Below the pieces are notes generated by a model that was not told where the DNA came from, did no database searches, and saw nothing but the letters and a program-made list of their open reading frames with translations. This document shows, in pieces, positions 1,980-44,073 of a DNA stretch of 64,000 bases. Each line of letters opens with the position of its first letter. Positions within the stretch are counted from its first letter, which is position 1. The DNA is taken from NCBI GenBank assembly GCA_946965045.2, contig OX337229.1:2108001-2172000 (forward strand), written 5' to 3'. Both the position numbers and the translations under genes were made by a program. This DNA comes from Epithemia pelagica (Eukaryota; Protista; Bacillariophyta).

Positions 1980-4028
1980 ATGATGACCACGACGGAACCA
2001 GAACCTTCTGGATCCAAGGAGGATGTGAAAAGTGGAGAAGGCAACGAGGACGCTCCCGAGACAGAATCAGCCCCTCAAACGCAATTTCATTTGAGTTTGT
2101 TTCAAACCTTGAGCCGTGTCCAATCGGAGCATGGCATCCCTCTTTTGGATTACGCTCAATATCATGAGTACTGTACGAAACGGTTGCATCGCATCCGTCA
2201 TCATAAGGATGTCCGGAATCAACTCGTAAATAGCACCAAGTATCGAAAACAGGCCGCGACGTCAGCGGCGGGTGCCAAGGCAGGGAGTGGTGGTGGCGAT
2301 GCAACTGCTGCTGCGGCTTCCAGCAAAAAGTCACGATCGCGATCTTCGGCAGGAGGACGGCATGCCTTTTGTGCACAACCAGTCCTTCCTGAAAATGGAG
2401 TGATATCCCATGAATACGTGTTGTGGAATTTGGTGTTTCAAGCGGAACGAGCCTGGTCCATGGCATGCTCGATGCAAGGGAATGATAGCGCAACTTCATC
2501 CGGACCAAATAGTAGCAACAACAACAGCACCTTTGGAAAGAAACAAAAGGCTCCATCCAAGAGTCATATCATTTCTCGCTTGAATAAGGCTGTTCATTGG
2601 GCTAGCTTGCTGGAAAGTGCCACCTCCAACGGCACTTGCGTGACTCCCACTACACAACGAGAAATTCAATCCTATTTGCAATGGATGAAGGGCAACCAGC
2701 AGCTACAGAAGCAAGATTATGTTGGCGCCTTTCGATCATTCACTTCCAGTCGAACACTTTTGCTCGAACTGGCTAGCACGAAGGATGGCAGTGGTGAGGC
2801 CACGACGGATGCCGAACAGGTAGCAAGGCAAGATATGTGGACCAATCGAGCCAACGATCTCTTGCTTCCTTTGATTCGGTACTGTCAGTACGAAGCCAAA
2901 GATGACGATTTGGTGCAGCCAGAAGAGTCTGCGAGCTCTGAGACGAAAGTAAAAGCGAAGAAAGAAAGTCACGGAATATCTGTTGAGTTTCGAAACCAAA
3001 CCATTGTCTTGGACTCGTATGCACAACTGGCGGTGCTGTATCTCAAGCTTGAAAAACACTTGGTCGGATCAGCTTTGGAAAAAGACGAGAACGAAAACGA
3101 AGTTACTAGTAGCCCATTATCGGAAACGGAGTTCTTGCAATGTTTATCGGATTTGGACGATGCCTTACGGCTGAGTGTGCAAGAACTTAAGCGATACCAA
3201 GCCTTACCAGATGGTCCTGCAGTCCACGCCAAACGAAGAGAACTTTCCAGTCTGAAGGCCTTTTTCCAGTACCATAAATTGTCCTTGCAGCGTCAACACC
3301 AAGAGGACCGTCTGGAACAACAAGAAAGTAATGTCTTTGTCGCGGACGCGGCCGAAATGCTTCATGTGTACGAGGCCTTGTTGAAGAACGTACAAGCCAT
3401 GGCAGACTTGAATCGTCAAGACGAGAATGATAGTGCCGAGAATCCCGATGCGAAATATTATCCCGAAGATGATCCGTTGTGGTTGGAAGCCCAAACGCAT
3501 GTAGTTCGGATTCGTGCCCTTCGTTGTTTTCAGTTGGCCCGGCTTTACGAGTCGCCCCAATGGCTCACAGGGACCACCACAGAGCAGGTACTGGCGCTCT
3601 TGCATCAATGCCGTCGTCTCGAACGACGAGCTCAGGAGGAAGTGGCGGCCTGTGAATTTGCCAACCCGGCTGATGAGGAGAAATATCAGAAACAACTGGA
3701 AATGCTCCATGTCCATGTCTTGGCAATGATTGCGCGTGTCAGTGCGGTCAGATTCCTCGAACAAGGAGAAGCTGCTACGGCCTCCAGCAAAGCAACGAAC
3801 CGACCATTGTGGCTGCGACTACGAGACTTGGATGCAGGAGTGGTCTTGGCTGATCAAGATCCCTCCCCGATCCTCATGCCGATTCCTTGCAAGCCGGTTT
3901 TCTATGACGTGGCATGGGAACATGTGACGGATTCCATGTCGTCCATGAATGTGTTGGACGATTATATTGCCCGAAGTGAACCCCAAAAGACGAAGTCGGG
4001 ATCTGGATTATTTGGGTGGTTCTCGTAG
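1980..4028 (+). CDS. SRP68: Signal recognition particle subunit SRP68
   Basis: N-terminal LSLFQ..SEHGI..DYAQYHEYCTKRLHRIR and C-terminal PIPCKPVFYDVAW...GLFGWF match SRP68 hallmark segments. First ATG at 1980. Confidence 0.9.
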   Translation: MMTTTEPEPSGSKEDVKSGEGNEDAPETESAPQTQFHLSLFQTLSRVQSEHGIPLLDYAQYHEYCTKRLHRIRHHKDVRNQLVNSTKYRKQAATSAAGAKAGSGGGDATAAAASSKKSRSRSSAGGRHAFCAQPVLPENGVISHEYVLWNLVFQAERAWSMACSMQGNDSATSSGPNSSNNNSTFGKKQKAPSKSHIISRLNKAVHWASLLESATSNGTCVTPTTQREIQSYLQWMKGNQQLQKQDYVGAFRSFTSSRTLLLELASTKDGSGEATTDAEQVARQDMWTNRANDLLLPLIRYCQYEAKDDDLVQPEESASSETKVKAKKESHGISVEFRNQTIVLDSYAQLAVLYLKLEKHLVGSALEKDENENEVTSSPLSETEFLQCLSDLDDALRLSVQELKRYQALPDGPAVHAKRRELSSLKAFFQYHKLSLQRQHQEDRLEQQESNVFVADAAEMLHVYEALLKNVQAMADLNRQDENDSAENPDAKYYPEDDPLWLEAQTHVVRIRALRCFQLARLYESPQWLTGTTTEQVLALLHQCRRLERRAQEEVAACEFANPADEEKYQKQLEMLHVHVLAMIARVSAVRFLEQGEAATASSKATNRPLWLRLRDLDAGVVLADQDPSPILMPIPCKPVFYDVAWEHVTDSMSSMNVLDDYIARSEPQKTKSGSGLFGWFS

Positions 4029-13854: not shown

Positions 13855-16528
<2,674 letters not shown>

Positions 16529-31378: not shown

Positions 31379-33872
31379 TTAGGGTGAAAACTCAAAGCCG
31401 CTGTCCCCACCACCACCTCCAGGTCTACGGACACTACTGTGAGGATATTTCGATCCAGCTCGTCGTGTCCTCCCACTGGACGTCGCACTGGTGGAAGTGG
31501 AGGTATTTGGTCGGGACCGGGTCGATGTGGTGGTCATGGAGGAGGTGCGGTTGCGCAATTCTCGAAGCATGGCCTTGGCCATGTCTCGTTCGGGACCCGC
31601 ATATTCAAGTAGTCGCGAACAAAAGAGAGCGGCTGTTTCGTATTCCCCACGATTCTTGTGATGGGTGGCCAGATATAACAAGGCTTCCGCTTCGGTATCT
31701 TCCACTACCAACTGTTGCAACATGAGTTCCAACGAGACGGGGCCATTGTTGCTGTTGTAGTCTGACACTGCAGCATTGGGACTGGTAATTTGATGACGCA
31801 ATTCCAAATGTCGAAAATAACACTGGGCCGCCTTGTCGTCTTGCCCCTGCTCTTCGTAGAGAGTGGCCAATTTTTGTGTCGCCAATCCTTCCGTATCATC
31901 TTGTTGAATCGCCCGTTCGTAGGCACGAATGGCATCGTCTTTGCGAAACAAGTGACTGTAAATTTGTCCCAAGGCTGACCACATGCGGGCATCGTAGGGT
32001 CGTAACTGCGCAGCTTGTTGATAATAGTATAAGGCCGACAAGTACATGCTCAGTAATTCATACGTTTGACCCAGTCCATACCAGGCTCGGTAATCGCGCG
32101 GTGCAACCTGTACGGCCCGACGATAGGCCTCCATGGCATGGGCCGTTTGTTTCCATTCGACATACTCATGACCCATTAATGTCCACGCACTAACATAGGT
32201 CCGATCCAAGGCCAACGCCCGTTGAAACGCTTGAATGGCCCGAGCTCTCATTTGTTTGAGACTATAGTAATTGCCAATGATACAGCTCGTTTCGGCCCGA
32301 TACTTGTCCACTTGAACGGCCACGTGAGCAAGTTGACTCAGGGACACCGCGTCTTCCTGAACGTAAAGAATATTGGAATAAACGTCCATACAGTCTAGTC
32401 GATAGGGCATATCGGCATGCATTTCGGCCAGAATACTTTGGGCGGCGGCAAAATGTCGCAATTGGTAGTGAACGAGGGCGCATTGTGACAAGAGATAGGG
32501 TGACCCTCCAAACATGGTGGCATCCATCCATCGCTGATAAATGGCCAACGCAGTAGCATGATCTTGATGCAAGGTTTGCAAATGGGCACAAAAGAAATGA
32601 TACATGAAATGATTGGACAAGGTCATGGCCAAGGGTGAGTCATCGCGTTCCAATTCTCGTTCGACGGCACGATCGGCAATGGCACAATCGGCCAAATCCA
32701 ACCAGGCACTCCAATTGTAGGGAAAGAGCTGAATGGATTGCAGCAATACCTTGTGCGCCTTGGGTGTACGACGCACTGGCAGTGCCAAATGACATTCCTG
32801 TGCTGCCACCAAGACCATTCCATATACATACAAACCAAAGGCATCTAGACAAGGACCATCGTCGCCCATATTGTCGTCGTGTTCGTCGTCTGGACGCATC
32901 GCCGCCGTCCCCAGAAGTCTGGTATTGCGGTAAGCTTCTCCCAGTTCCTCCACAAGCTGCAACAGGTACGGATTTCGGAGCGAGATGGCAACACCGACAC
33001 CCGAACCATGACCATCCTTGTCACTGTGACAGATGAAGAGGAGAAGAGTGATTCAGATGAACCAGATAGGAGGAGGTAAAACGTAAAAACAGAAAGACAA
33101 TTGCAAAGCATAAGTGGGCATTTGCCTTGCTCGCAATGGCAACATTCATGACTTTCTAAATACGTTGTACAACATGGAGGTGTCTCGTACTTTGATTGTC
33201 AACCGAATGCAGTTTGCTCGAAACATACCTTGGATTCCTCGCTGTAGTTCCGCCTGTACCAGGGGTGTTACCGCTGCCCTGATTTTCAGGATTGTTGCGT
33301 TCATGAAATTCTTCTTCCTTGCGTTGTTCACCAGCCATATAGAGGGCATATGCTCGCAATCCAACCGCAGCTGGGCTCAAATCCGGCAAGGGAGGTGGCA
33401 TGGTTTCGACCGTTGTGGTTATGCCTGTCTCATCACCACCACTCGACGCGGCTTGACTTAATACGGCGGCGGCATGGGCATATTCGGATAAATCCATCAG
33501 TGTTTTGGCATAGCAATAGAGTGGCGACGACGATGAGGCTGATGCGTCGTTGCAATATTCGACGGGGATGCTGCAGGGAGGCAACTGCATGTGATCGACG
33601 GCAGGCAACCCCATCCATTGTTCGGCCGCCCACTTGGCAGCCAGTTTGAATCCACGTTCCGTCAATATCTGGCAGGCTCGTTGCAAGTCAACATAGGCTT
33701 GTGAGGGATTCCATTCGACGTTTTGTTGTGGTAGCTGTGATTGTGGGTCCAATCGAAACACAGAAGGCGTCATTGTGGAATGTCCTGGTGAAGTCAATAT
33801 ACTTGATCCTCGTGGAGTAGATGTCGACGTCGACAACATCATGGGAGAAAAGGGCTGAGGGCGGTTCGGCAT
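31379..33872 (-). CDS. CDC23: Anaphase-promoting complex subunit 8 (Cdc23)
   Basis: Exons 33872-33229 and 33023-31379 (intron GTATGT..CAG). LTERGFKLAAKWAAEQ, YNWSAWLDL, MDVYSNILYV, ETSCIIGNYYSL, AWTLMGHEYVE and DYRAWYGLGQTYE TPR motifs. Confidence 0.95.
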
Positions 33873-36568: not shown

Positions 36569-38307
36569 TCATTGGGTTTTCTTGGTTCCCAGATTCCGTT
36601 GCTTTTCAGCCGCTTCTTGTGCTTCTTGTTTGGAAGGAAGCAGTTGTGATAACGAAACTGTGGAACACATCCACAAAGCAACGACTCCAAAGGAGAGCCT
36701 ACCGAGGCCACGAAGACTTGTCCATCCCACGGCCGTCAACCCGGATAATCTGTTCCGTCACAAAGCAAAAACAGACAACAAAAGAAAAAGCAAAACCACG
36801 TGAGACGATACACATATCAGGAAAACGTCCTTGGGAATGAGCGTACGTACATTAAAGACATGCCAGATTTTCCAAATCGGGATCCAAACACGCCGAGAAT
36901 TTCTTTTCCTAGATAGCGACTTTCAAAGTCCAATGGCTGATACACCATGTTGTAAACCACTGTTCGGATCGAGTAGTCCGTGACCTTGGCAATAAACATG
37001 GCCGTAGCCACTAGTGTAAGGCTCAAGTCCGCTTGAAGCAGCTGCAAGAAGCAGACCGTCAAGGGAAAGAGTGGCATGACTCGCCAGATCCATCGTGGTT
37101 CGGCATATTTCATAAAGGAGGGCAAGACCAGAAACTGCAAAACAGCGGCAACCCCATTGACATAGGAGTAAAACTGACCCGTGTAGGCCGACCGTGCCAC
37201 GTCGTCGGAAATCGCCGCCTTGAGGGCTGTAATAAAGGCAACGCCCAGAATTGTATTGAGAGACTGCCACGAGAGGACTTCCACAAACAGGGCTTTGAGT
37301 GTGGGAACCCTTTGAAACAAATCCAACGCTTGCCGAATGCGACCAACTTTAGCTGTGCTCGATTCCATGGTCTCTTTTTCTTTTTGTTTGCTCAACTGTT
37401 TGGCTTTCATTTGTGCTTTGGGATCAAAGTTGTATCGTTCTCCCAAAGCATATGCTTCATCTCCCGAAATCAGACAGAGCGACAAGGTCAAACATGTGCA
37501 TGCCATTAGTCCGTAGAGTCCTGTAAATGGAAGGAGATAAGGGACAAGTCCACCAAATAAACTGCATACGATACTAGTAAATCCTCCCAAAAATGCAAAC
37601 CATCTGGAGCCTTCGTCGGGTGTCAGGACCGAGCCAACAAAGGACCAATATTGTGTGTAGAGCAGATACTGATAACTGTTTTGAAACAAAAACGTCAGTC
37701 CAATCAAGGACTGACTCACAATTCGAGGCATTCCCGTCGTTTTACAGAGCCACAGGGACAAGGCGGCGGCTCCGATGAAAACAATGGAAAACAATGTGGT
37801 GTTCCGTAAGGCGACACGAGGTCCTTTGGCATCGAGCTGCTGGCCATATCCCCACAAGAGAATCAAGGAAAATGGACTCACGCAAGCGTTTGCCAAAGGA
37901 AATGCGGCGGAAGAGGAAAAGCCATATTCCGACGAGGTGAAGAGGCCCAGACACGAGTTGCGAAAGAATTCGTATCCACCAAAATGCAGTGCCATGGCAC
38001 TGGCCATGAACACCACAGCACGATATCGAGGTTGTGCTAGTCTCGTCACTGTCTCGGACAACTTGGATCTATCCTTGTCGTCTTTTGTTGTGTCAGTAGA
38101 TTGGTGCTCGGAGAGGCTTGGACTGTCGTCCTTATTGTCGGTAGAGTCGCTCATGGCCGATCGCAGTCGCGAGGCCTGATGGGCAATGGCCGGAAGGGCA
38201 AGCGAGGAAGTCAAAGGAAGCACTACGTGTGACGACAAGGAGGTTTGCTGGAGGAAACCCAAGGCTGACGGTGGTACACCACTCATTGACCCCACCGTAT
38301 GAAGCAT
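36569..38307 (-). CDS. TLC/AAA-family nucleotide carrier-like membrane protein (NTT-like)
   Basis: About 12 transmembrane segments; YWSFVGSVLTPDEGSRWF and KVTDYSIR..MVYQPLDFESRYLGK..VFGSRFGKSG resemble TLC-family motifs. Intron 36850-36750 (GTACGT..CAG) adds a final TM exon ending at TGA 36569. Start uncertain. Confidence 0.7.
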
Positions 38308-38701
38308 AGGATGATCCGCATGTAATGGTGGTCGGCACACACATGTACAGTGGCTGATGGCTGATGGCGCTGGCCCTAAACGACGTCTAATGAAAAAGAT
38401 GAACTCCGACGGACGTCAGACCTGTTCCGATTCGTGATTCAATGGAGAACAAGGACTATACAATACCTAGCGGTAAAAGCATTTTGTGTTCAGTCGTGTG
38501 GACGCCGTCATTGCTGGACGGTGATGCGGTGGCGGTGGCGCACGAAGATCGACGTGTGTTCTTGTTCGTTTTCGACTCTCGACAATGTTCCGGATGCGGA
38601 CCGATTCGACACATCCAAGAAAGCAACGGATGACCTTGGCATAACTTATTCCCTCTACCATATCCTATACCATTGATCCACCCAGAACAGAATTCAAGGC
38701 A

Positions 38702-39397
38702 ATGATTACGTTACATCATCTTGAGAATTCCCAGTCATTTCGCATTGTCTGGCTCCTGGAAGAGCTGGAGATGCCGTATGAGTTGAAGATTTACCAACGA
38801 ACCGAGGAGCAACTTGCACCTCCGGAATACAAGGCCATTTCTCCTCTGGGAACGTCTCCCACCATTACCGTGGCCGATAGCAATCTGGCTCTGAGTGAAA
38901 GCAATGCCATTATGGAGTACATTCTGGATGAAGCCCAACATTCGGGAACCGACAAGAATCTCCGACCAAGTCCTGGTTCACCCGAACGAGTCGACTTTTT
39001 GTTTTGGTTCCACACATCGGCGGCAACCTTCCAGACTCTCATGTCCATAGATACGCTTTTCCAGATTCTTCCCAAGCGTGTTCCTTGTCCCATTAATTCG
39101 ATTCTACGGGTTGTGGCTTCCAAAGTCGATGAATCCTACATTCGACCACGATTGGATGCCGTGTTCAAGCTGGCGGAAGAAAAACTGTCGACCGACCCGT
39201 TTTTGGCCGGAAGTCACTTGACGGCAGCCGATATAACAATCATTTATTCGTTCGATGCGGCCTTTGCCCGCATTGCCGATCTGAAATCAACCTACCCATT
39301 TTGTTACAAATGGCTAGGACGAATGTTGGAACGTCCAGCACTGAAAAATGCCTTGAAAAAGATTGGACAAGACTCTATTTCGTTCAAGGATTTCTAG
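38702..39397 (+). CDS. Glutathione S-transferase, GTT1-like class
   Basis: MITLHHLENSQSFRIVWLLEEL..YEL..LAPPEYKAISPLGTSPTI..LSESNAIMEY and FLAGSHLTAADI. Confidence 0.9.
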   Translation: MITLHHLENSQSFRIVWLLEELEMPYELKIYQRTEEQLAPPEYKAISPLGTSPTITVADSNLALSESNAIMEYILDEAQHSGTDKNLRPSPGSPERVDFLFWFHTSAATFQTLMSIDTLFQILPKRVPCPINSILRVVASKVDESYIRPRLDAVFKLAEEKLSTDPFLAGSHLTAADITIIYSFDAAFARIADLKSTYPFCYKWLGRMLERPALKNALKKIGQDSISFKDF

Positions 39398-39652
39398 TGT
39401 ATTTTGTGTGTAACATGTTATGGAATTTCGATTGTACTGTCAACTTTGCCATCTCGATTCTCGATACAAAATCTGCTCACAATGTCGTAGGCAGAGAAAA
39501 GTAGTTTGAACTCCAACGTTCCGTTCGGAATAACCGTGAATCTCCCAGGTCTTGTTGCGCTATGACAAAGCGAAAGGACATACCTTTCATACGACAAGAC
39601 TATGGCAGACAGAAGTGATTGCTGGTCCTATATAGGACTCTTTGTCCGTGTC

Positions 39653-40387
39653 TCAAAATGCCATGGTCGAAATCTGTTCCACCGTTGCGGTCATGACGAC
39701 ACCCAGGAGAATGAGGGCCGTGGCCGCCAACACTGGATTGTCCCCCGAGTTCCATTTGGCTTGTTTCAAAACGGGTAAGGCTGGTTCTTTTTGACGACCC
39801 GCCACGGCAGGCCCCTTGTTGAGCCAATCGGAAAACAACCATCGTTCCAAGGCACGATCCTTCTTCTTGACAGCAGTGGACGACTCGACTCCCTCCAGGC
39901 TGTCTGTCGTGCCATGAATGCTGTCCGTCGCATTGGAACTCACAGTTAGATTGGTAGTCGGCAGTGCCGTCGCAGCAGAGTCTTGGAGTTCGTCCAAATA
40001 GTCTTTGAGAGGACCACGTTTCTTGTCGAGCGCCAGATTGGTACGAGACACGGGAACGACTTGATAGGCCCACACCCACACGGCCAACGCGGTCAATAGG
40101 ACAATGACTCCAAACCCAATCAACACGGTGGGTTCCGGAAGCACGGGTTCAAAGGTTGTCGCTGGCGTCGTCGTCGTCATGGAGCTATCTGTCCACATGC
40201 TGCTACCGTCCACTGGCGAACCACTCACAACATCTGCTGCCTCCTCTACCACTGGACGACCCATCCATGCATCCTCCTTCGACGCGAAACCACGAGCCGT
40301 TGTTCGACGATGGATCGGCAAGTATTGTCGTCGTGGAGCTTGGAACCCACACCTGGTACAGGTAGACGACCACGGTGCCATTGTCAT
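39653..40387 (-). CDS. Uncharacterised membrane protein with two predicted TM helices
   Basis: 244-codon ORF with an R/S/T-rich N-terminus and two hydrophobic helices (VLIGFGVIVLLTALAVWVWA; PVLAATALILLGVVMTATV). No family recognised. Confidence 0.65.
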   Translation of the reverse strand: MTMAPWSSTCTRCGFQAPRRQYLPIHRRTTARGFASKEDAWMGRPVVEEAADVVSGSPVDGSSMWTDSSMTTTTPATTFEPVLPEPTVLIGFGVIVLLTALAVWVWAYQVVPVSRTNLALDKKRGPLKDYLDELQDSAATALPTTNLTVSSNATDSIHGTTDSLEGVESSTAVKKKDRALERWLFSDWLNKGPAVAGRQKEPALPVLKQAKWNSGDNPVLAATALILLGVVMTATVEQISTMAF

Positions 40388-40530
40388 TCTTTCACCACTC
40401 TTTCATCTAATATAACATAATAATCTATTGGATAGTTCATTCATCTTTCATCTGTTGACTTGCGACATTGATTACGCTAATGAATCTCTTCTGACTTCTG
40501 ACTCAAAAATCAACAAAAGATGAGCGATGG

Positions 40531-40553
40531 TGACGTCTGACGTCATTTGACGC
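40531..40553. promoter_or_regulatory. Cluster of three TGACG (CRE/CCRE-like, bZIP-type) elements in a bidirectional promoter
   Basis: TGACGT at 40531-40536, perfect palindrome TGACGTCA at 40538-40545 and TGACGC at 40548-40553, between divergent ATGs at 40387 and 40784. Confidence 0.6.
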
Positions 40554-40783
40554 GGCAAACGGACAGATCTTCCATCAAAATGATGTGTGTGTGTGTGGTG
40601 TTCGTGTGGTTCGTGAGTTTTTTTGAGTGGATGTGGAAGGTTTTCTCTGGTGCCAGCTGTCAAACCAGACGAAGACTTCTTGTAACGCTCTCCATATCGC
40701 CTTCGCGGCAATCGAGCAATCTCTTTCTATCGCTGTTTGATCGATAGACCACCAGATAGAGGAAGATCAAGACATCTTGACCT

Positions 40784-42403
40784 ATGTCCGCAACCATGTG
40801 GACGAATTTTACAAGGAAGCGTTGCTCTACCGGGGGGCTGTTGTTGCTTCTTGTTTGGACCGCACAGTGGTGGTCTGCTGCCCATGCGTTGATTCCCTGG
40901 AGTCCAACGACTTTCTCACAACGTCCGGCAGTCTTTCCTAGTAGACCAACCACGACATGCATGCCTTTTCGAGTAAGCTTGCATGACCGGGGGAGGGCCC
41001 ACCGGAATTGGCGACCACAACAACATGTCGTGAGTTCCCGACGAATGGGACAGGAGGGTCGTTATTATTCGGTGGAAGAACGATATCAACCCGATCAAGA
41101 TCGAGAAGCACAAGAACCGCGAGCACGATGGATCCGATGGATGATTGGAGGCAAACCTCGGGGTACCAACAAAGTTATTTTGCGGGAAGCGGTAGAATTG
41201 GGAGGTGTTCCCCGCAGTGATCGATACTCGAGCCGCGATTGGTTGCATTCCTTTATTACCCTTCCCAATTCCAATATTTTGCAAGATATTGCCAGTCCTG
41301 TACGAGCAATCACCCTTTGGGCTACCGTCTTGTCGTTGGTACACCATTTTGGACTAAAAGCGCAGGCCTCCTGGGTTTCGTACTTGTATTTGCCCTCTAC
41401 AGCGCCCCATTCCCTCATGATGTCCGCCTTGGGTTTGCTCTTGGTCTTTCGAACGAATTCGGCCTATCAACGGTTTGCGGAAGGACGAAAAATTTGGGAA
41501 GACATTGTCAATACATCGCGTGATTTGTATCGTATGATGATGCTCTATGAAACGGAAATTGGAATGGACAAGCGACGACGGTTGCAAAAACTATTGGCTG
41601 CCTTTCCCTATCTCTTGCGTCATCGCATTCGTCCCAATCTCGTCATGAAACCTTTGGACGACCAATTCGACCGTGACCCGGAACATACCATCTTGTTGTA
41701 TCAAGATCAAGGTCCAACAGACGATGACGAAAAGGCGGCAGCCCTGGCACAAACAGAAGAAGATTCCACGCACATGAGTTTTAGCGACGGTCGACTCCCC
41801 CTTTTTTGGGTGGATAAGCGGACCTTGCCATGGCGATTGTTGCCATCCGATGGTGCCTTGGAAAAATGTGCACGAGCTCAAAACCGACCATTGTGGGTCT
41901 GCGATCGCATGGCACAAGAACTACGGACCGTACCGGATGGTCCACAATTCACCAATCGAGAACGATTAGGGTTGATTGGTCATGTGGATAAACTGTCGCG
42001 ATGTATTGGTGGCGCAGAGCGGATTCATCAAACGGTCGTTCCCTTGAATTATGCTCGACATACCCTCCGTGCGTTGACCGTGTGGTTGTTTTCCTTGCCC
42101 TTTGTGCTGGTCAAGGACTTGAAATTGTTGACGGCTCCGGTCTTGTTTGTCATGTCATGGATGCTCTTTGGTGTCTTTGAAGTGTCCTGTGCCATTGAGG
42201 ATCCATTTCAAGGAACTCTGCGCTTGTCGATATTATGCGATTCCATTAGAAGGGACGTTTTGGGTGATGAACCCATTCGATCGACGGCCTTTCGCTTGGA
42301 AGAACGACGACGAGCGGCGGCGGCGGCAAGTGATTCGTCCGCCGTCCATCGGAACGGAGGTGACAATTCACCGAGCGGAGGACTCGACACCACCTTTGAG
42401 TAA
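40784..42403 (+). CDS. Bestrophin-like anion channel (UPF0187/YneE/VCCN type), probably plastid-targeted
   Basis: LGLLLVFRTNSAYQRF.EGRKIW, ERIHQTVVPLNYARH and FGVFEVSCAIEDPF. Bipartite presequence (LLLLLVWTAQWWSAAHA-L plus an S/T/R-rich transit region). Confidence 0.9.
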   Translation: MSATMWTNFTRKRCSTGGLLLLLVWTAQWWSAAHALIPWSPTTFSQRPAVFPSRPTTTCMPFRVSLHDRGRAHRNWRPQQHVVSSRRMGQEGRYYSVEERYQPDQDREAQEPRARWIRWMIGGKPRGTNKVILREAVELGGVPRSDRYSSRDWLHSFITLPNSNILQDIASPVRAITLWATVLSLVHHFGLKAQASWVSYLYLPSTAPHSLMMSALGLLLVFRTNSAYQRFAEGRKIWEDIVNTSRDLYRMMMLYETEIGMDKRRRLQKLLAAFPYLLRHRIRPNLVMKPLDDQFDRDPEHTILLYQDQGPTDDDEKAAALAQTEEDSTHMSFSDGRLPLFWVDKRTLPWRLLPSDGALEKCARAQNRPLWVCDRMAQELRTVPDGPQFTNRERLGLIGHVDKLSRCIGGAERIHQTVVPLNYARHTLRALTVWLFSLPFVLVKDLKLLTAPVLFVMSWMLFGVFEVSCAIEDPFQGTLRLSILCDSIRRDVLGDEPIRSTAFRLEERRRAAAAASDSSAVHRNGGDNSPSGGLDTTFE

Positions 42404-42548
42404 GAAGCAAGGAAGATTTTCTGTAAATAGCAGTGGGAACATATGTACATAACGACGAATTAGATATTATAGACATGAATGTTCTAGAGGAATTATTGTC
42501 GAAGGGTGTACATCCATGCCAAACACTGCGGCATTTGAGAGATAGACT

Positions 42549-44073
42549 TTACTTTGCATACTCTTTCTGCAACAATTTGGCTATGGTTTGTAGCTGGATG
42601 TTTGATGTCTGACTCGAAAAAACGAATGATGACTGTGAGTTTAAAGAATATTCCTCAAAGCTTTTTCATTCCGCCAATGTTACAACGTACCCCTTCGTAG
42701 ATTGACCCAACTTTGCAATCGCGATAAAATTTCTCTGCGAGCAAGTCCTTGGTAAATCCAATTCCTCCCAACCATTCAATCGTTTTCTGTATATAGCAAG
42801 AAGAACGGTAACACGTGAGAAAAGACGCATTTCTTCAAGTACGGGAACCACTCTAAACACAACGTACACTGGCCACTGCTTCTGCCACTTGACTGGAGTA
42901 TAACTTGGCCATGCTTGCTTCCTTGACAAAGGTTTGTTTGTTTTCTTTGAGACGACACGCATTGTAGGTGAGGAGGGATGCGGCTTCAATCTGTGTCGCT
43001 AATTGTGCGTATTGATGTTGCATGCCTTGAAAGTCTCCAATGGGCTGTCCAAATTGCTGCCGTTCTTGGAGGTATGGCATGGCAATATCCATGCACCCTT
43101 TGGCAATCCCGATTTGCTGGGCGGCAATACCAATGCGACCTTCATTGAGAATCTCAATACAGTACTTGTACCCCTTCCCCTCCTCGCCCAAACGATCGTG
43201 GACTAGGACTTTGACATTTTCCAGCGTAATGGGACAGGTCGAAGACGCACGCAAACCCAGTTTGGATTCAGGAGAACCCACAGTAACGCCAGGAGTTTGG
43301 GCATCCACCATAAAGGCGGTAATGCCCTTGTACCCAGCCGATGGATTGGCATTGGCAAAAATGAGAAAAACTCCTGCCTGTTGTGCATTGGATATCCACA
43401 GTTTCGATCCATTAATGGTATAAAAGTCTTCTCCCTCCCGTCGGTGAGCCGTCGTTTTCATGGCAAATGCATCCGTCCCACTACCTGCTTCGGAAAGGCA
43501 GAAGGAACTCACTGTATCACTGGCAAGACGAGGCAACCATCGTTCTTGTAAATCCATGGAACCCCAGAACCGAACGGCATTGTTGGTCAAGGTATTGTGA
43601 ATGTCCACCAAGATTGCTACGGACGGATCGACACGTGATATTTCTTCCACCACCAAGCATGCCGTCATGAAGGACATGGCACTCCCACCATAGTCTTCTG
43701 GGATTTCCATTCCCATAAAGCCTTGATCGAATAAGGACTGTAAAATATCGGGACGCAACTGACCTTGGTCGTCCATTTCTCGAACAATGGGAAGAAGATC
43801 CTGTCGAGCCCAGCTTCGTACAGTTTCCTGGACGAGTCGTTCATCTTCATCAAACATTGTCAATGGAAGATGTGTTGTTGTGGAATCATCGCTCGTAAAA
43901 GTAGTAGCCGCAGTTGATAGGGAACAAGAACGAATCGGAGAATGTAAAAGCCGCCGCCCTGCAATACAATCCACCAGCGGTTTCGACTTGACGACAACGC
44001 GGACTCGTGAACCATCGGATATAATCGATTGAGCGATACGCCTCCCAGTTGTCATCGACATTGTGGTTGCCAT
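42549..44073 (-). CDS. ACADSB: Short/branched-chain acyl-CoA dehydrogenase, mitochondrial
   Basis: Exons 44073-42868, 42786-42691 and 42608-42549. [32 protein letters not shown]; splicing rebuilds [30 protein letters not shown]. Arg/Ser-rich presequence. Confidence 0.93.

What the first reader, a model, noticed from the sequence alone, without database searches (positions are those of the whole stretch)
40387..40784. CO2/cAMP-responsive-element-like triplet in a bidirectional promoter driving a plastid bestrophin
Seen in sequence: TGACGT-C-TGACGTCA-TT-TGACGC within 23 bp, centred in the 396-bp gap between two divergent genes. I roughly estimate about 0.1 such triple TGACG clusters per 64 kb by chance. 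Known: the Phaeodactylum ptca1 promoter uses CCREs TGACGT, ACGTCA and TGACGC, bound by a bZIP, for CO2/cAMP regulation, and thylakoid bestrophin-like channels are implicated in algal CO2-concentrating mechanisms. Inference: a CO2-regulated two-gene unit.
Basis: partly seen in the sequence, partly recalled or inferred. Interest (0 to 1): 0.75.

Follow-up and report, generated by a model that had tools for sequence, protein, structure and literature searches.

The report
Conserved CRE cluster upstream of diatom bestrophin
A tight cluster of three bZIP-type (TGACG) binding motifs sits between two back-to-back diatom genes, one a chloroplast-targeted bestrophin channel; its central palindrome recurs upstream of the same gene in other diatoms, so it is probably a real control element, but a link to CO2 sensing is unproven and the same arrangement is already published for a related gene.

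Summary
The motif is real: TGACGT-c-TGACGTCA-tt-TGACGC lies at 40531-40553, between two divergent genes.

The + gene is a Bestrophin_2 protein. Its orthologs carry a signal peptide followed by an A|F plastid-import motif. The genome is not Phaeodactylum; the closest named hit is Epithemia clementina. The gene is not PtBST1-4.

New here: the octamer TGACGTCA occurs once in the window. It is also the only copy in the Epithemia clementina, Nitzschia inconspicua and Seminavis robusta loci, each time 170-430 bp upstream of the ortholog. An unbiased k-mer scan ranks ACGTCAT first (7 of 10 lineages; 6 of 9 without the window, P about 8e-6).

RNA-like contigs leave 40491-40742 untranscribed, with the cluster inside it.

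A conserved bZIP/CRE element is therefore well supported. CO2/cAMP control remains analogy only, because aureochromes bind the same TGACGT. Nigishi et al. 2024 already described a CCRE set upstream of the low-CO2-inducible PtBST1. I class this as a new member of a known kind.

Other unchecked first-reader notes of this scan report TGACGT clusters elsewhere in this genome (GLDC promoter, MITEs).

The parts
40531..40536 (+). Site A, TGACGT (CCRE1-type half-CRE). It reads TTACGT in the close relative L001.
40538..40545 (.). Site B, the perfect palindromic CRE TGACGTCA (holds both TGACGT and ACGTCA). It is the only copy in the window and the evolutionarily conserved core, read as ACGTCAT-Y-Y towards the bestrophin gene.
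40548..40553 (+). Site C, TGACGC (CCRE3-type). Conserved in L001.
40491..40742 (.). Core of the shared promoter, not covered by the RNA-like run X4. The cluster lies 41-63 bp from the edge of minus-gene coverage (40490) and about 190 bp from the first plus-gene contig (40743).
   Evidence: contigs only, so the ends are approximate
40796..42403 (+). Bestrophin_2-family channel gene (the ORF opens at 40784; the likely start is 40796). Single exon. N-terminal signal peptide with AHA|L, against A|F in orthologs.
39653..40387 (-). Divergent 244-aa ORF (the recorded model is 203 aa, starting at 40264). It belongs to a diatom-wide family without a Pfam domain, has two hydrophobic segments, and sits head-to-head with the bestrophin ortholog in L001, L007/L008 and L011 as well.

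Best explanation
The cluster is a functional docking site for bZIP dimers of the CRE/ACGT-core type. It lies in the roughly 250-bp untranscribed core shared by two divergent genes. Its anchor is the palindrome TGACGTCA(T), an old promoter feature of this plastid-targeted bestrophin orthogroup in pennate diatoms. In this species two extra half-sites (TGACGT and TGACGC) were added 7 and 10 bp from its centre. That gives the same three sequence types and the same order as the Phaeodactylum CCRE1-3 module, though much more compact (23 bp against about 45 bp).

Bound bZIP factors set transcription of the bestrophin gene. Because the cluster lies about 40-60 bp from the apparent start of the neighbour's transcript, they probably set that gene's transcription too.

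The most likely single input is the CO2/cAMP pathway through a bZIP11-like factor, repressing at high CO2, by analogy with PtCA1, PtCA2 and PtBST1.

Shown here: the sequence, its rarity, its conservation, its position between the transcripts, the protein family and the targeting signals.

Inferred: bZIP binding, the regulatory effect and the identity of the signal.

Confidence is about 0.55 that it is a functional bZIP element, and about 0.3 overall that the signal is CO2/cAMP.
For: - The cluster is rare: 0.1-0.3% of simulated windows.
- TGACGTCA is unique in the 64-kb window and in each of L002 (Epithemia clementina), L004 (Nitzschia inconspicua) and L006 (Seminavis robusta). In each it lies at -312, -430 and -168 from the ortholog's start.
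- ACGTCAT is the top-ranked 7-mer of 3801 in the 600-bp upstream regions of 10 lineages (7 of 10, p 2e-9). TGACGTCA is a top 8-mer.
- With a noncoding-only background and the window left out, 6 of 9 lineages carry it, P 7.5e-6.
- The element has the same orientation and the same T-Y-Y flank in those lineages.
- There are no TIR or transposon marks around it.
- The RNA-like run X4 leaves 40491-40742 uncovered.
- Where the gene pair is kept (L001, L007, L011), the TGACG elements lie in the shared gap.
- For CO2/cAMP specifically: all three CCRE sequence types are present, on both strands. Nigishi et al. use that criterion for PtCA1- and PtBST1-type promoters. The PtBST1 promoter contains CTGACGTCAT about 290 bp upstream of its ATG. 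Bestrophin-like genes sit in CO2-responsive clusters in Thalassiosira and other algae.
Against: - There is no expression data under different CO2 or cAMP conditions, and no binding data.
- The gene is not in the same orthogroup as the characterised PtBST1-4.
- Only some bestrophin paralogs respond to CO2. In Chaetoceros affinis 4 of 16 met the threshold, in both directions.
- TGACGT is recognised by aureochromes, and probably by other diatom bZIPs; the latter rests on my own knowledge.
- Only the central palindrome is conserved. Site A is already lost in the closest relative.
- Sites A and B overlap by one base, so three dimers may not fit at once (inference).
- The cluster is about 190 bp from the apparent bestrophin transcript start, not at -86 to -42 as in ptca1.
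- Three of 10 lineages (L009, L012 and, strictly, L003) lack ACGTCAT within 600 bp.
Confidence: 0.55

Rival explanations
1. The cluster is a light or circadian element. It would be a set of 'aureo boxes' (TGACGT) bound by aureochrome bZIP-LOV factors, alone or as heterodimers. That would tie expression of a thylakoid or plastid anion channel to blue light or the time of day rather than to CO2.
For: Diatom aureochromes 1a and 1c recognise the ACGT core within TGACGT, and promoters predicted to be their targets hold more than one such motif (PMC4937327). A plastid ion channel related to the plant thylakoid channel (closest solved structure 7EK1) is a plausible light-acclimation gene. In ptca2 the CO2 and light signals converge on the same elements, so the two readings overlap.
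Against: The aureochrome paper describes motifs spaced 100-150 bp apart, not a 23-bp triplet. The full set TGACGT + ACGTCA + TGACGC fits the CCRE description more closely. No binding or light-response data are available for this gene.
Confidence: 0.2
2. The cluster is a generic bZIP site used by another pathway, such as nitrogen or carbon metabolism, stress, or basal activation. In that case it would have nothing specific to do with either CO2 or light.
For: The palindromic CRE is the consensus for many bZIP classes (general knowledge). Diatoms encode many bZIPs. The host is an Epithemia-like diatom, a group with nitrogen-fixing endosymbionts, where nitrogen and carbon balance signalling could matter.
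Against: Nothing points to a specific alternative signal. The resemblance to the published PtBST1 and PtCA1 promoters is closer than to any other described diatom element.
Confidence: 0.15
3. The triplet is a chance or neutral arrangement with no regulatory role. The palindrome in other species would then be coincidence or a compositional effect.
For: At 0.1-0.3% per 64-kb window, about one to a few such clusters are expected somewhere in a diatom genome by chance. The window was chosen because it holds the motif. Window and L001 are too close for their shared 52-bp identical block to mean much.
Against: With the window excluded, 6 of 9 independent lineages carry ACGTCAT within 600 bp upstream, P 7.5e-6 against noncoding background. 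The octamer is unique within each of three 7.5-9.5-kb loci, and each time it lies upstream of the ortholog. It ranks first in an unbiased k-mer scan.
Confidence: 0.1

Closest known systems
CCRE set in the PtBST1 promoter of Phaeodactylum tricornutum (Nigishi et al. 2024, PMC11142338)
   Same: Several TGACGT/C motifs on both strands, including CTGACGTCAT, lie within about 300 bp upstream of the start codon of a plastid-targeted bestrophin-family gene.
   Different: The species is different (Epithemia-like) and so is the bestrophin orthogroup. Here there are three sites within 23 bp rather than sites spread over about 150 bp. PtBST1 is shown to be induced at low CO2, while this gene has no expression data. 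Here the promoter is shared with a divergent gene.
CCRE1-3 of the ptca1/ptca2 promoters, bound by PtbZIP11 (Ohno et al. 2012; Tanaka et al. 2016; read through PMC7378808 and PMC11142338)
   Same: The same three sequences (TGACGT, ACGTCA, TGACGC) appear in the same order.
   Different: The ptca1 elements span -86 to -42 from the TSS. Here the cluster spans 23 bp. It lies about -41 to -63 from the apparent end of the neighbour's transcript, but about -190 from the bestrophin's. Neither bZIP11 binding nor a cAMP response has been tested.
Aureo box (TGACGT) of aureochrome bZIP-LOV factors (PMC4937327)
   Same: The same hexamer with an ACGT core, in multiple copies within one promoter.
   Different: The described aureochrome targets have motifs 100-150 bp apart. 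TGACGC and the full palindrome are not part of that description.
Metazoan and fungal cAMP response element (CRE, TGACGTCA) bound by CREB/ATF
   Same: The octamer is identical and lies near the promoter.
   Different: This is a different kingdom and a different signalling context. It is a resemblance of sequence only.

Membership tests
CO2-cAMP-responsive element (CCRE) module | Presence of TGACGT, ACGTCA and TGACGC | tested here: met
   All three lie in 40531-40553.
CO2-cAMP-responsive element (CCRE) module | Motifs on both DNA strands (the criterion Nigishi et al. use to separate PtCA1-, PtCA2- and PtBST1-type promoters) | tested here: met
   The palindrome TGACGTCA supplies the antisense copy.
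CO2-cAMP-responsive element (CCRE) module | Position close to the TSS (-86 to -42 in ptca1) | tested here: inconclusive
   Contigs of the RNA-like run X4 end at 40490 for the minus gene, which puts the cluster at -41 to -63. They begin at 40743 for the plus gene, which puts it at about -190 to -212. Contigs cannot fix a TSS.
CO2-cAMP-responsive element (CCRE) module | Binding by a bZIP11-type factor | not testable with these tools
   Needs EMSA or DAP-seq.
CO2-cAMP-responsive element (CCRE) module | Transcription repressed by high CO2 or cAMP, and dependent on the elements | not testable with these tools
   No runs on record as RNA were found, and none under defined CO2.
   Met for the central palindrome or ACGTCAT only: 7 of 10 lineages. 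The triplet itself is species-specific.
Bestrophin family (Pfam Bestrophin_2, PF25539) | Domain match above the curated threshold | tested here: met
   180.8 bits against a cut-off of 27, covering residues 152-492. The closest solved structures are 7EK1 (E 2e-25) and bacterial bestrophins (E 1e-18).
Diatom BST1-4 clade (low-CO2-inducible thylakoid or pyrenoid bestrophins) | Orthology to PtBST1-4 or TpBST1-2 | tested here: not met
   None of the PtBST primers is in the window. The N-terminus and the block before the first membrane helix differ from all six printed sequences. The gene's own orthologs, at 55-81% identity, form a separate diatom-wide group. No tree including PtBST sequences was built.
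Diatom BST1-4 clade (low-CO2-inducible thylakoid or pyrenoid bestrophins) | Bipartite plastid presequence (signal peptide followed by an ASAFAP-type motif) | tested here: met
   Most full-length orthologs show a hydrophobic N-terminus followed by A|F. The window copy has AHA|L and L001 has AHA|F. This was judged by eye; no predictor was run.

The most novel reading that the evidence does not exclude
The palindromic CRE marks an ancient, diatom-wide CO2/cAMP (CCRE) regulon. This regulon would include a second, uncharacterised clade of plastid bestrophin channels. In some lineages it would also include a conserved two-helix membrane protein of unknown function, transcribed from the same bidirectional promoter. 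If so, CCRE-type control predates the radiation of raphid pennates and operates in diazoplast-bearing Epithemia-like diatoms. It would also point to two new candidate components of the diatom CO2-concentrating mechanism.
Probability: 0.22. Interest if true: 0.55.

Novelty: new member of a known kind. Interest (0 to 1): 0.38.

Why it matters
Diatom carbon fixation depends on a CO2-concentrating mechanism whose transcriptional control is known from only a few Phaeodactylum promoters. A CRE conserved upstream of one bestrophin orthogroup in Epithemia, Nitzschia, Seminavis and other pennates would extend that control logic beyond one model species and one gene clade. It would also nominate an uncharacterised plastid anion channel, and possibly its neighbour, as candidates for regulated carbon or ion handling. 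Finally, it offers a compact 23-bp natural element for testing how bZIP site number and spacing encode CO2 against light responses.

Tried and rejected
1. I first assumed the window was Phaeodactylum and the gene PtBST1. I rejected this because no PtBST1-4 primer is present, the N-termini differ and the best named hit is Epithemia clementina.

2. I considered whether the cluster was delivered by a MITE or TIR element, as unchecked notes report elsewhere in this genome. No inverted repeats or duplications flank it.

3. I looked for other conserved blocks around the CRE in orthologs. Nothing beyond ACGTCAT-Y-Y aligned.

4. I tried to widen the promoter set with one metagenome scan. Most high-identity hits were short, probably transcript contigs, though their origin was not checked, and they had no CCRE-type hexamer more than about 110 bp before the matched region (L019 and L020 each have one closer in). 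The few genomic contigs, at 44-54% identity, have TGACG-type sites upstream, including a palindrome in L029. Their start codons are only inferred, so I did not count them.

5. The original CCRE papers (PMC3252111, PMC4734587) are not held. Their content was taken from PMC7378808 and PMC11142338.

6. I could not obtain the P. tricornutum or T. pseudonana ortholog or its CO2 response.

7. I did not build a tree with the PtBST sequences, because they exist here only as OCR text and I did not retype them.
Full report
**Observation.** The string TGACGTCTGACGTCATTTGACGC is at 40531-40553. It holds three sites: TGACGT, the perfect palindrome TGACGTCA, and TGACGC. TGACG as such is not enriched in the window, with 131 hits against about 140 expected. 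This is, however, the only place with three or more hits inside 23 bp, and TGACGTCA occurs only here in the 64 kb. In 2000 first-order Markov simulations of the window, an equally dense cluster arose in 0.3% of windows for the pentamer and 0.1% for the strict CCRE hexamers. Across a whole diatom genome, one to a few such clusters are still expected, so rarity alone does not prove function.

**Surroundings.** The cluster lies between a minus-strand ORF (39653-40387, 244 aa) and a plus-strand ORF (40784-42403, 539 aa). The plus protein is a Bestrophin_2 family member: PF25539, E 5e-53, residues 152-492. Its closest solved relatives are the bestrophin-like protein 7EK1 (E 2e-25) and bacterial bestrophins (E 1e-18). 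The minus protein has no Pfam match. It does have 475 relatives, all unnamed and from diatom transcriptomes or diatom-like contigs. The model on record for this genome is 203 aa, which would start at 40264. In the 97%-identical relative L001 the first ATG of the bestrophin ORF is broken by a 1-bp insertion, so the likely start is 40796. The gap is thus 396 bp between ORFs and up to 531 bp between likely start codons, with the cluster near its middle in both cases.

**Organism and gene identity.** The best hits are an unnamed ENA contig (97%) and Epithemia clementina (81%). Amphora, Mayamaea, Nitzschia, Cylindrotheca, Seminavis, Pseudo-nitzschia and centric diatoms follow at 55-75%. The window therefore comes from an Epithemia-like raphid pennate, not Phaeodactylum. 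None of the published PtBST1-4 primers occurs in the window. The N-terminus and the conserved block before the first membrane helix differ from PtBST1-4 and TpBST1-2 as printed in that paper's supplement. This is a separate, diatom-wide bestrophin orthogroup. Most full-length orthologs start with a hydrophobic signal peptide followed by A|F. That is the ASAFAP-type plastid-import signature, and the rule itself is taken from established diatom knowledge. The window copy reads AHA|L and L001 reads AHA|F. 'Plastid bestrophin' is therefore a reasonable description. 'Thylakoid CCM bestrophin' has not been shown.

**Transcripts.** No run is on record as RNA. Even so, run X4 behaves like RNA. Its contigs skip two 81-82-nt stretches with GT..AG ends on the minus strand in the acyl-CoA dehydrogenase gene downstream. 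Its depth also differs strongly between genes and is zero in parts of the intergenic DNA. In X4, coverage of the minus gene ends at 40490, coverage of the plus gene begins at 40743, and nothing lies in the 40556-40709 bin. The DNA-like runs X1 and X2 cover that stretch. The cluster therefore sits in an untranscribed core. It is about 41-63 bp from the apparent start of the minus transcript and about 190-210 bp from the apparent start of the bestrophin transcript. Contigs cannot fix a TSS, so these distances are approximate. The bestrophin coding region is colinear with the RNA contigs, so it has no intron.

**Conservation, which is the main new evidence.** I fetched the DNA around ten orthologs.
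- In L001 the palindrome and TGACGC are kept, but the first site reads TTACGT.
- TGACGTCA lies at -312 in E. clementina (L002), -430 in Nitzschia inconspicua (L004) and -168 in Seminavis robusta (L006). In each of these 7.5-9.5-kb loci it is the only copy.
- Cylindrotheca (L005) has GACGTCAT at about -115 and L007 has CACGTCAT at about -147. Mayamaea (L003) has GCGTCAT at about -124. L011 has two TGACGTG sites 11 bp apart plus a TGACGC.
- All share the orientation ACGTCAT-Y-Y towards the gene.
- An unbiased scan of all k-mers in the 600-bp upstream regions of ten lineages ranks ACGTCAT first of 3801 7-mers (7 of 10 lineages, p 2e-9). TGACGTCA and AATGACGT rank first among 8-mers.
- Against a noncoding-only background, and with the window excluded to remove ascertainment bias, 6 of 9 lineages carry it, P 7.5e-6.
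- No other block around the site is conserved, and nothing suggests a transposon delivered it.

One metagenome scan added mostly short contigs, probably transcripts, though I did not check their origin. These carry no CCRE-type hexamer except one each in L019 and L020, close to the matched region. It also added a few distant genomic contigs with TGACG-type sites upstream. I did not count those, because their start codons are only inferred.

**The gene pair.** The 244-aa gene lies head-to-head with the bestrophin ortholog in L001, L007/L008 and L011, at 47-85% identity. In those loci the TGACG-type elements lie in the shared gap. The pairing is absent in E. clementina, Nitzschia, Cylindrotheca, Seminavis, L009 and L012. 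It is also absent at two loci fetched through the 244-aa family. The CRE therefore travels with the bestrophin gene. Co-regulation of the neighbour is plausible here, given the geometry, but it is not a general rule.

**What is known.** In P. tricornutum the ptca1 and ptca2 promoters carry CCRE1-3 (TGACGT, ACGTCA, TGACGC) at -86 to -42. These mediate the CO2 response via cAMP (PMC7378808). Nigishi et al. 2024 reported TGACGT/C motifs on both strands within about 300 bp upstream of PtBST1. They linked the motifs to bZIP11 and cAMP and showed low-CO2 induction of PtBST1-4. The printed PtBST1 upstream sequence contains CTGACGTCAT. Bestrophin-like genes belong to a CO2-responsive cluster in T. pseudonana and respond in several algae, but only some paralogs do, and in both directions. 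TGACGT is also the 'aureo box' of the blue-light aureochromes. The motif therefore identifies the class of factor (bZIP), not the signal.

**Verdict.** This is very probably a real, conserved bZIP/CRE promoter element of a plastid-targeted bestrophin orthogroup. In this species it has grown into a compact triplet that matches the CCRE sequence set. The CO2/cAMP interpretation remains an analogy, at roughly 0.3. Light or aureochrome control, or another bZIP pathway, are live rivals. The arrangement has a published precedent (PtBST1), so I class it as a new member of a known kind, of moderate interest.

**Other notes.** Other first-reader notes of this scan, which I did not check, report TGACGT clusters elsewhere in this genome: at the GLDC promoter, on MITEs and upstream of a pump gene. 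A genome-wide test of a CCRE regulon would be the natural follow-up.

Noticed in passing
window 39653-40387 (-): The 244-aa neighbour belongs to a diatom-wide family (475 hits, no Pfam domain). It has a strongly conserved block, roughly TFEP-LPD, one membrane helix, then WVWANQVVPVSRTNLA, and a second hydrophobic segment at the C-terminus. Many orthologs begin M-x-A-F directly, without a signal peptide. The start codon in the window is uncertain (40387 or 40264).
   Followed up: partly
window 42609-42690 and 42787-42867: Run X4 contigs skip 82 and 81 nt with CT..AC ends (GT..AG on the minus strand). These are two short introns of the acyl-CoA dehydrogenase gene downstream, and they show that X4 is RNA-derived although it is not recorded as such. 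One X4 contig runs from the bestrophin gene into that gene, so the 3' ends of the two convergent genes may overlap.
   Followed up: partly
window 40784-40798; L001 about 3990-4003: The first ATG of the bestrophin ORF is not conserved in the 97%-identical relative (a 1-bp insertion). The likely start codon is 40796.
   Followed up: yes
window 40584-40597: A (TG)7 microsatellite lies 30 bp downstream of the cluster. It differs in length and sequence from L001. The stretch just upstream of the cluster (about 40497-40530) is also rearranged between the two, while the cluster and the 32 bp after it are identical.
   Followed up: no
window 36817-44073; L001, L002, L011: Gene order is conserved. TLC-type transporter, GST, the 244-aa gene, bestrophin, acyl-CoA dehydrogenase and a sugar transporter appear in that order in L001. 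The bestrophin and acyl-CoA dehydrogenase pair is also kept in E. clementina (L002) and in L011.
   Followed up: partly
window 14568-14681: This is the second-densest TGACG region of the window (4 hits in 100 bp, both strands). It lies inside the range another note calls an AdoMetDC-aminopropyltransferase fusion gene, so it is probably coding. It contains no strict CCRE hexamer cluster.
   Followed up: no
window 40043-40410: Runs X2, X3 and X4 carry variant letters (for example 40043 A>C, 40087 A>G, 40233 T>C, 40410 A>C) that are absent from X1. This suggests allelic or strain variation in the 244-aa gene and its 5' region. No variant was listed inside the motif cluster.
   Followed up: no
window 34460: This is the only other ACGTCAT in noncoding-like sequence of the window (AAACGTCATCC). 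It lies about 590 bp upstream of the minus-strand ORF 33156-33872.
   Followed up: no
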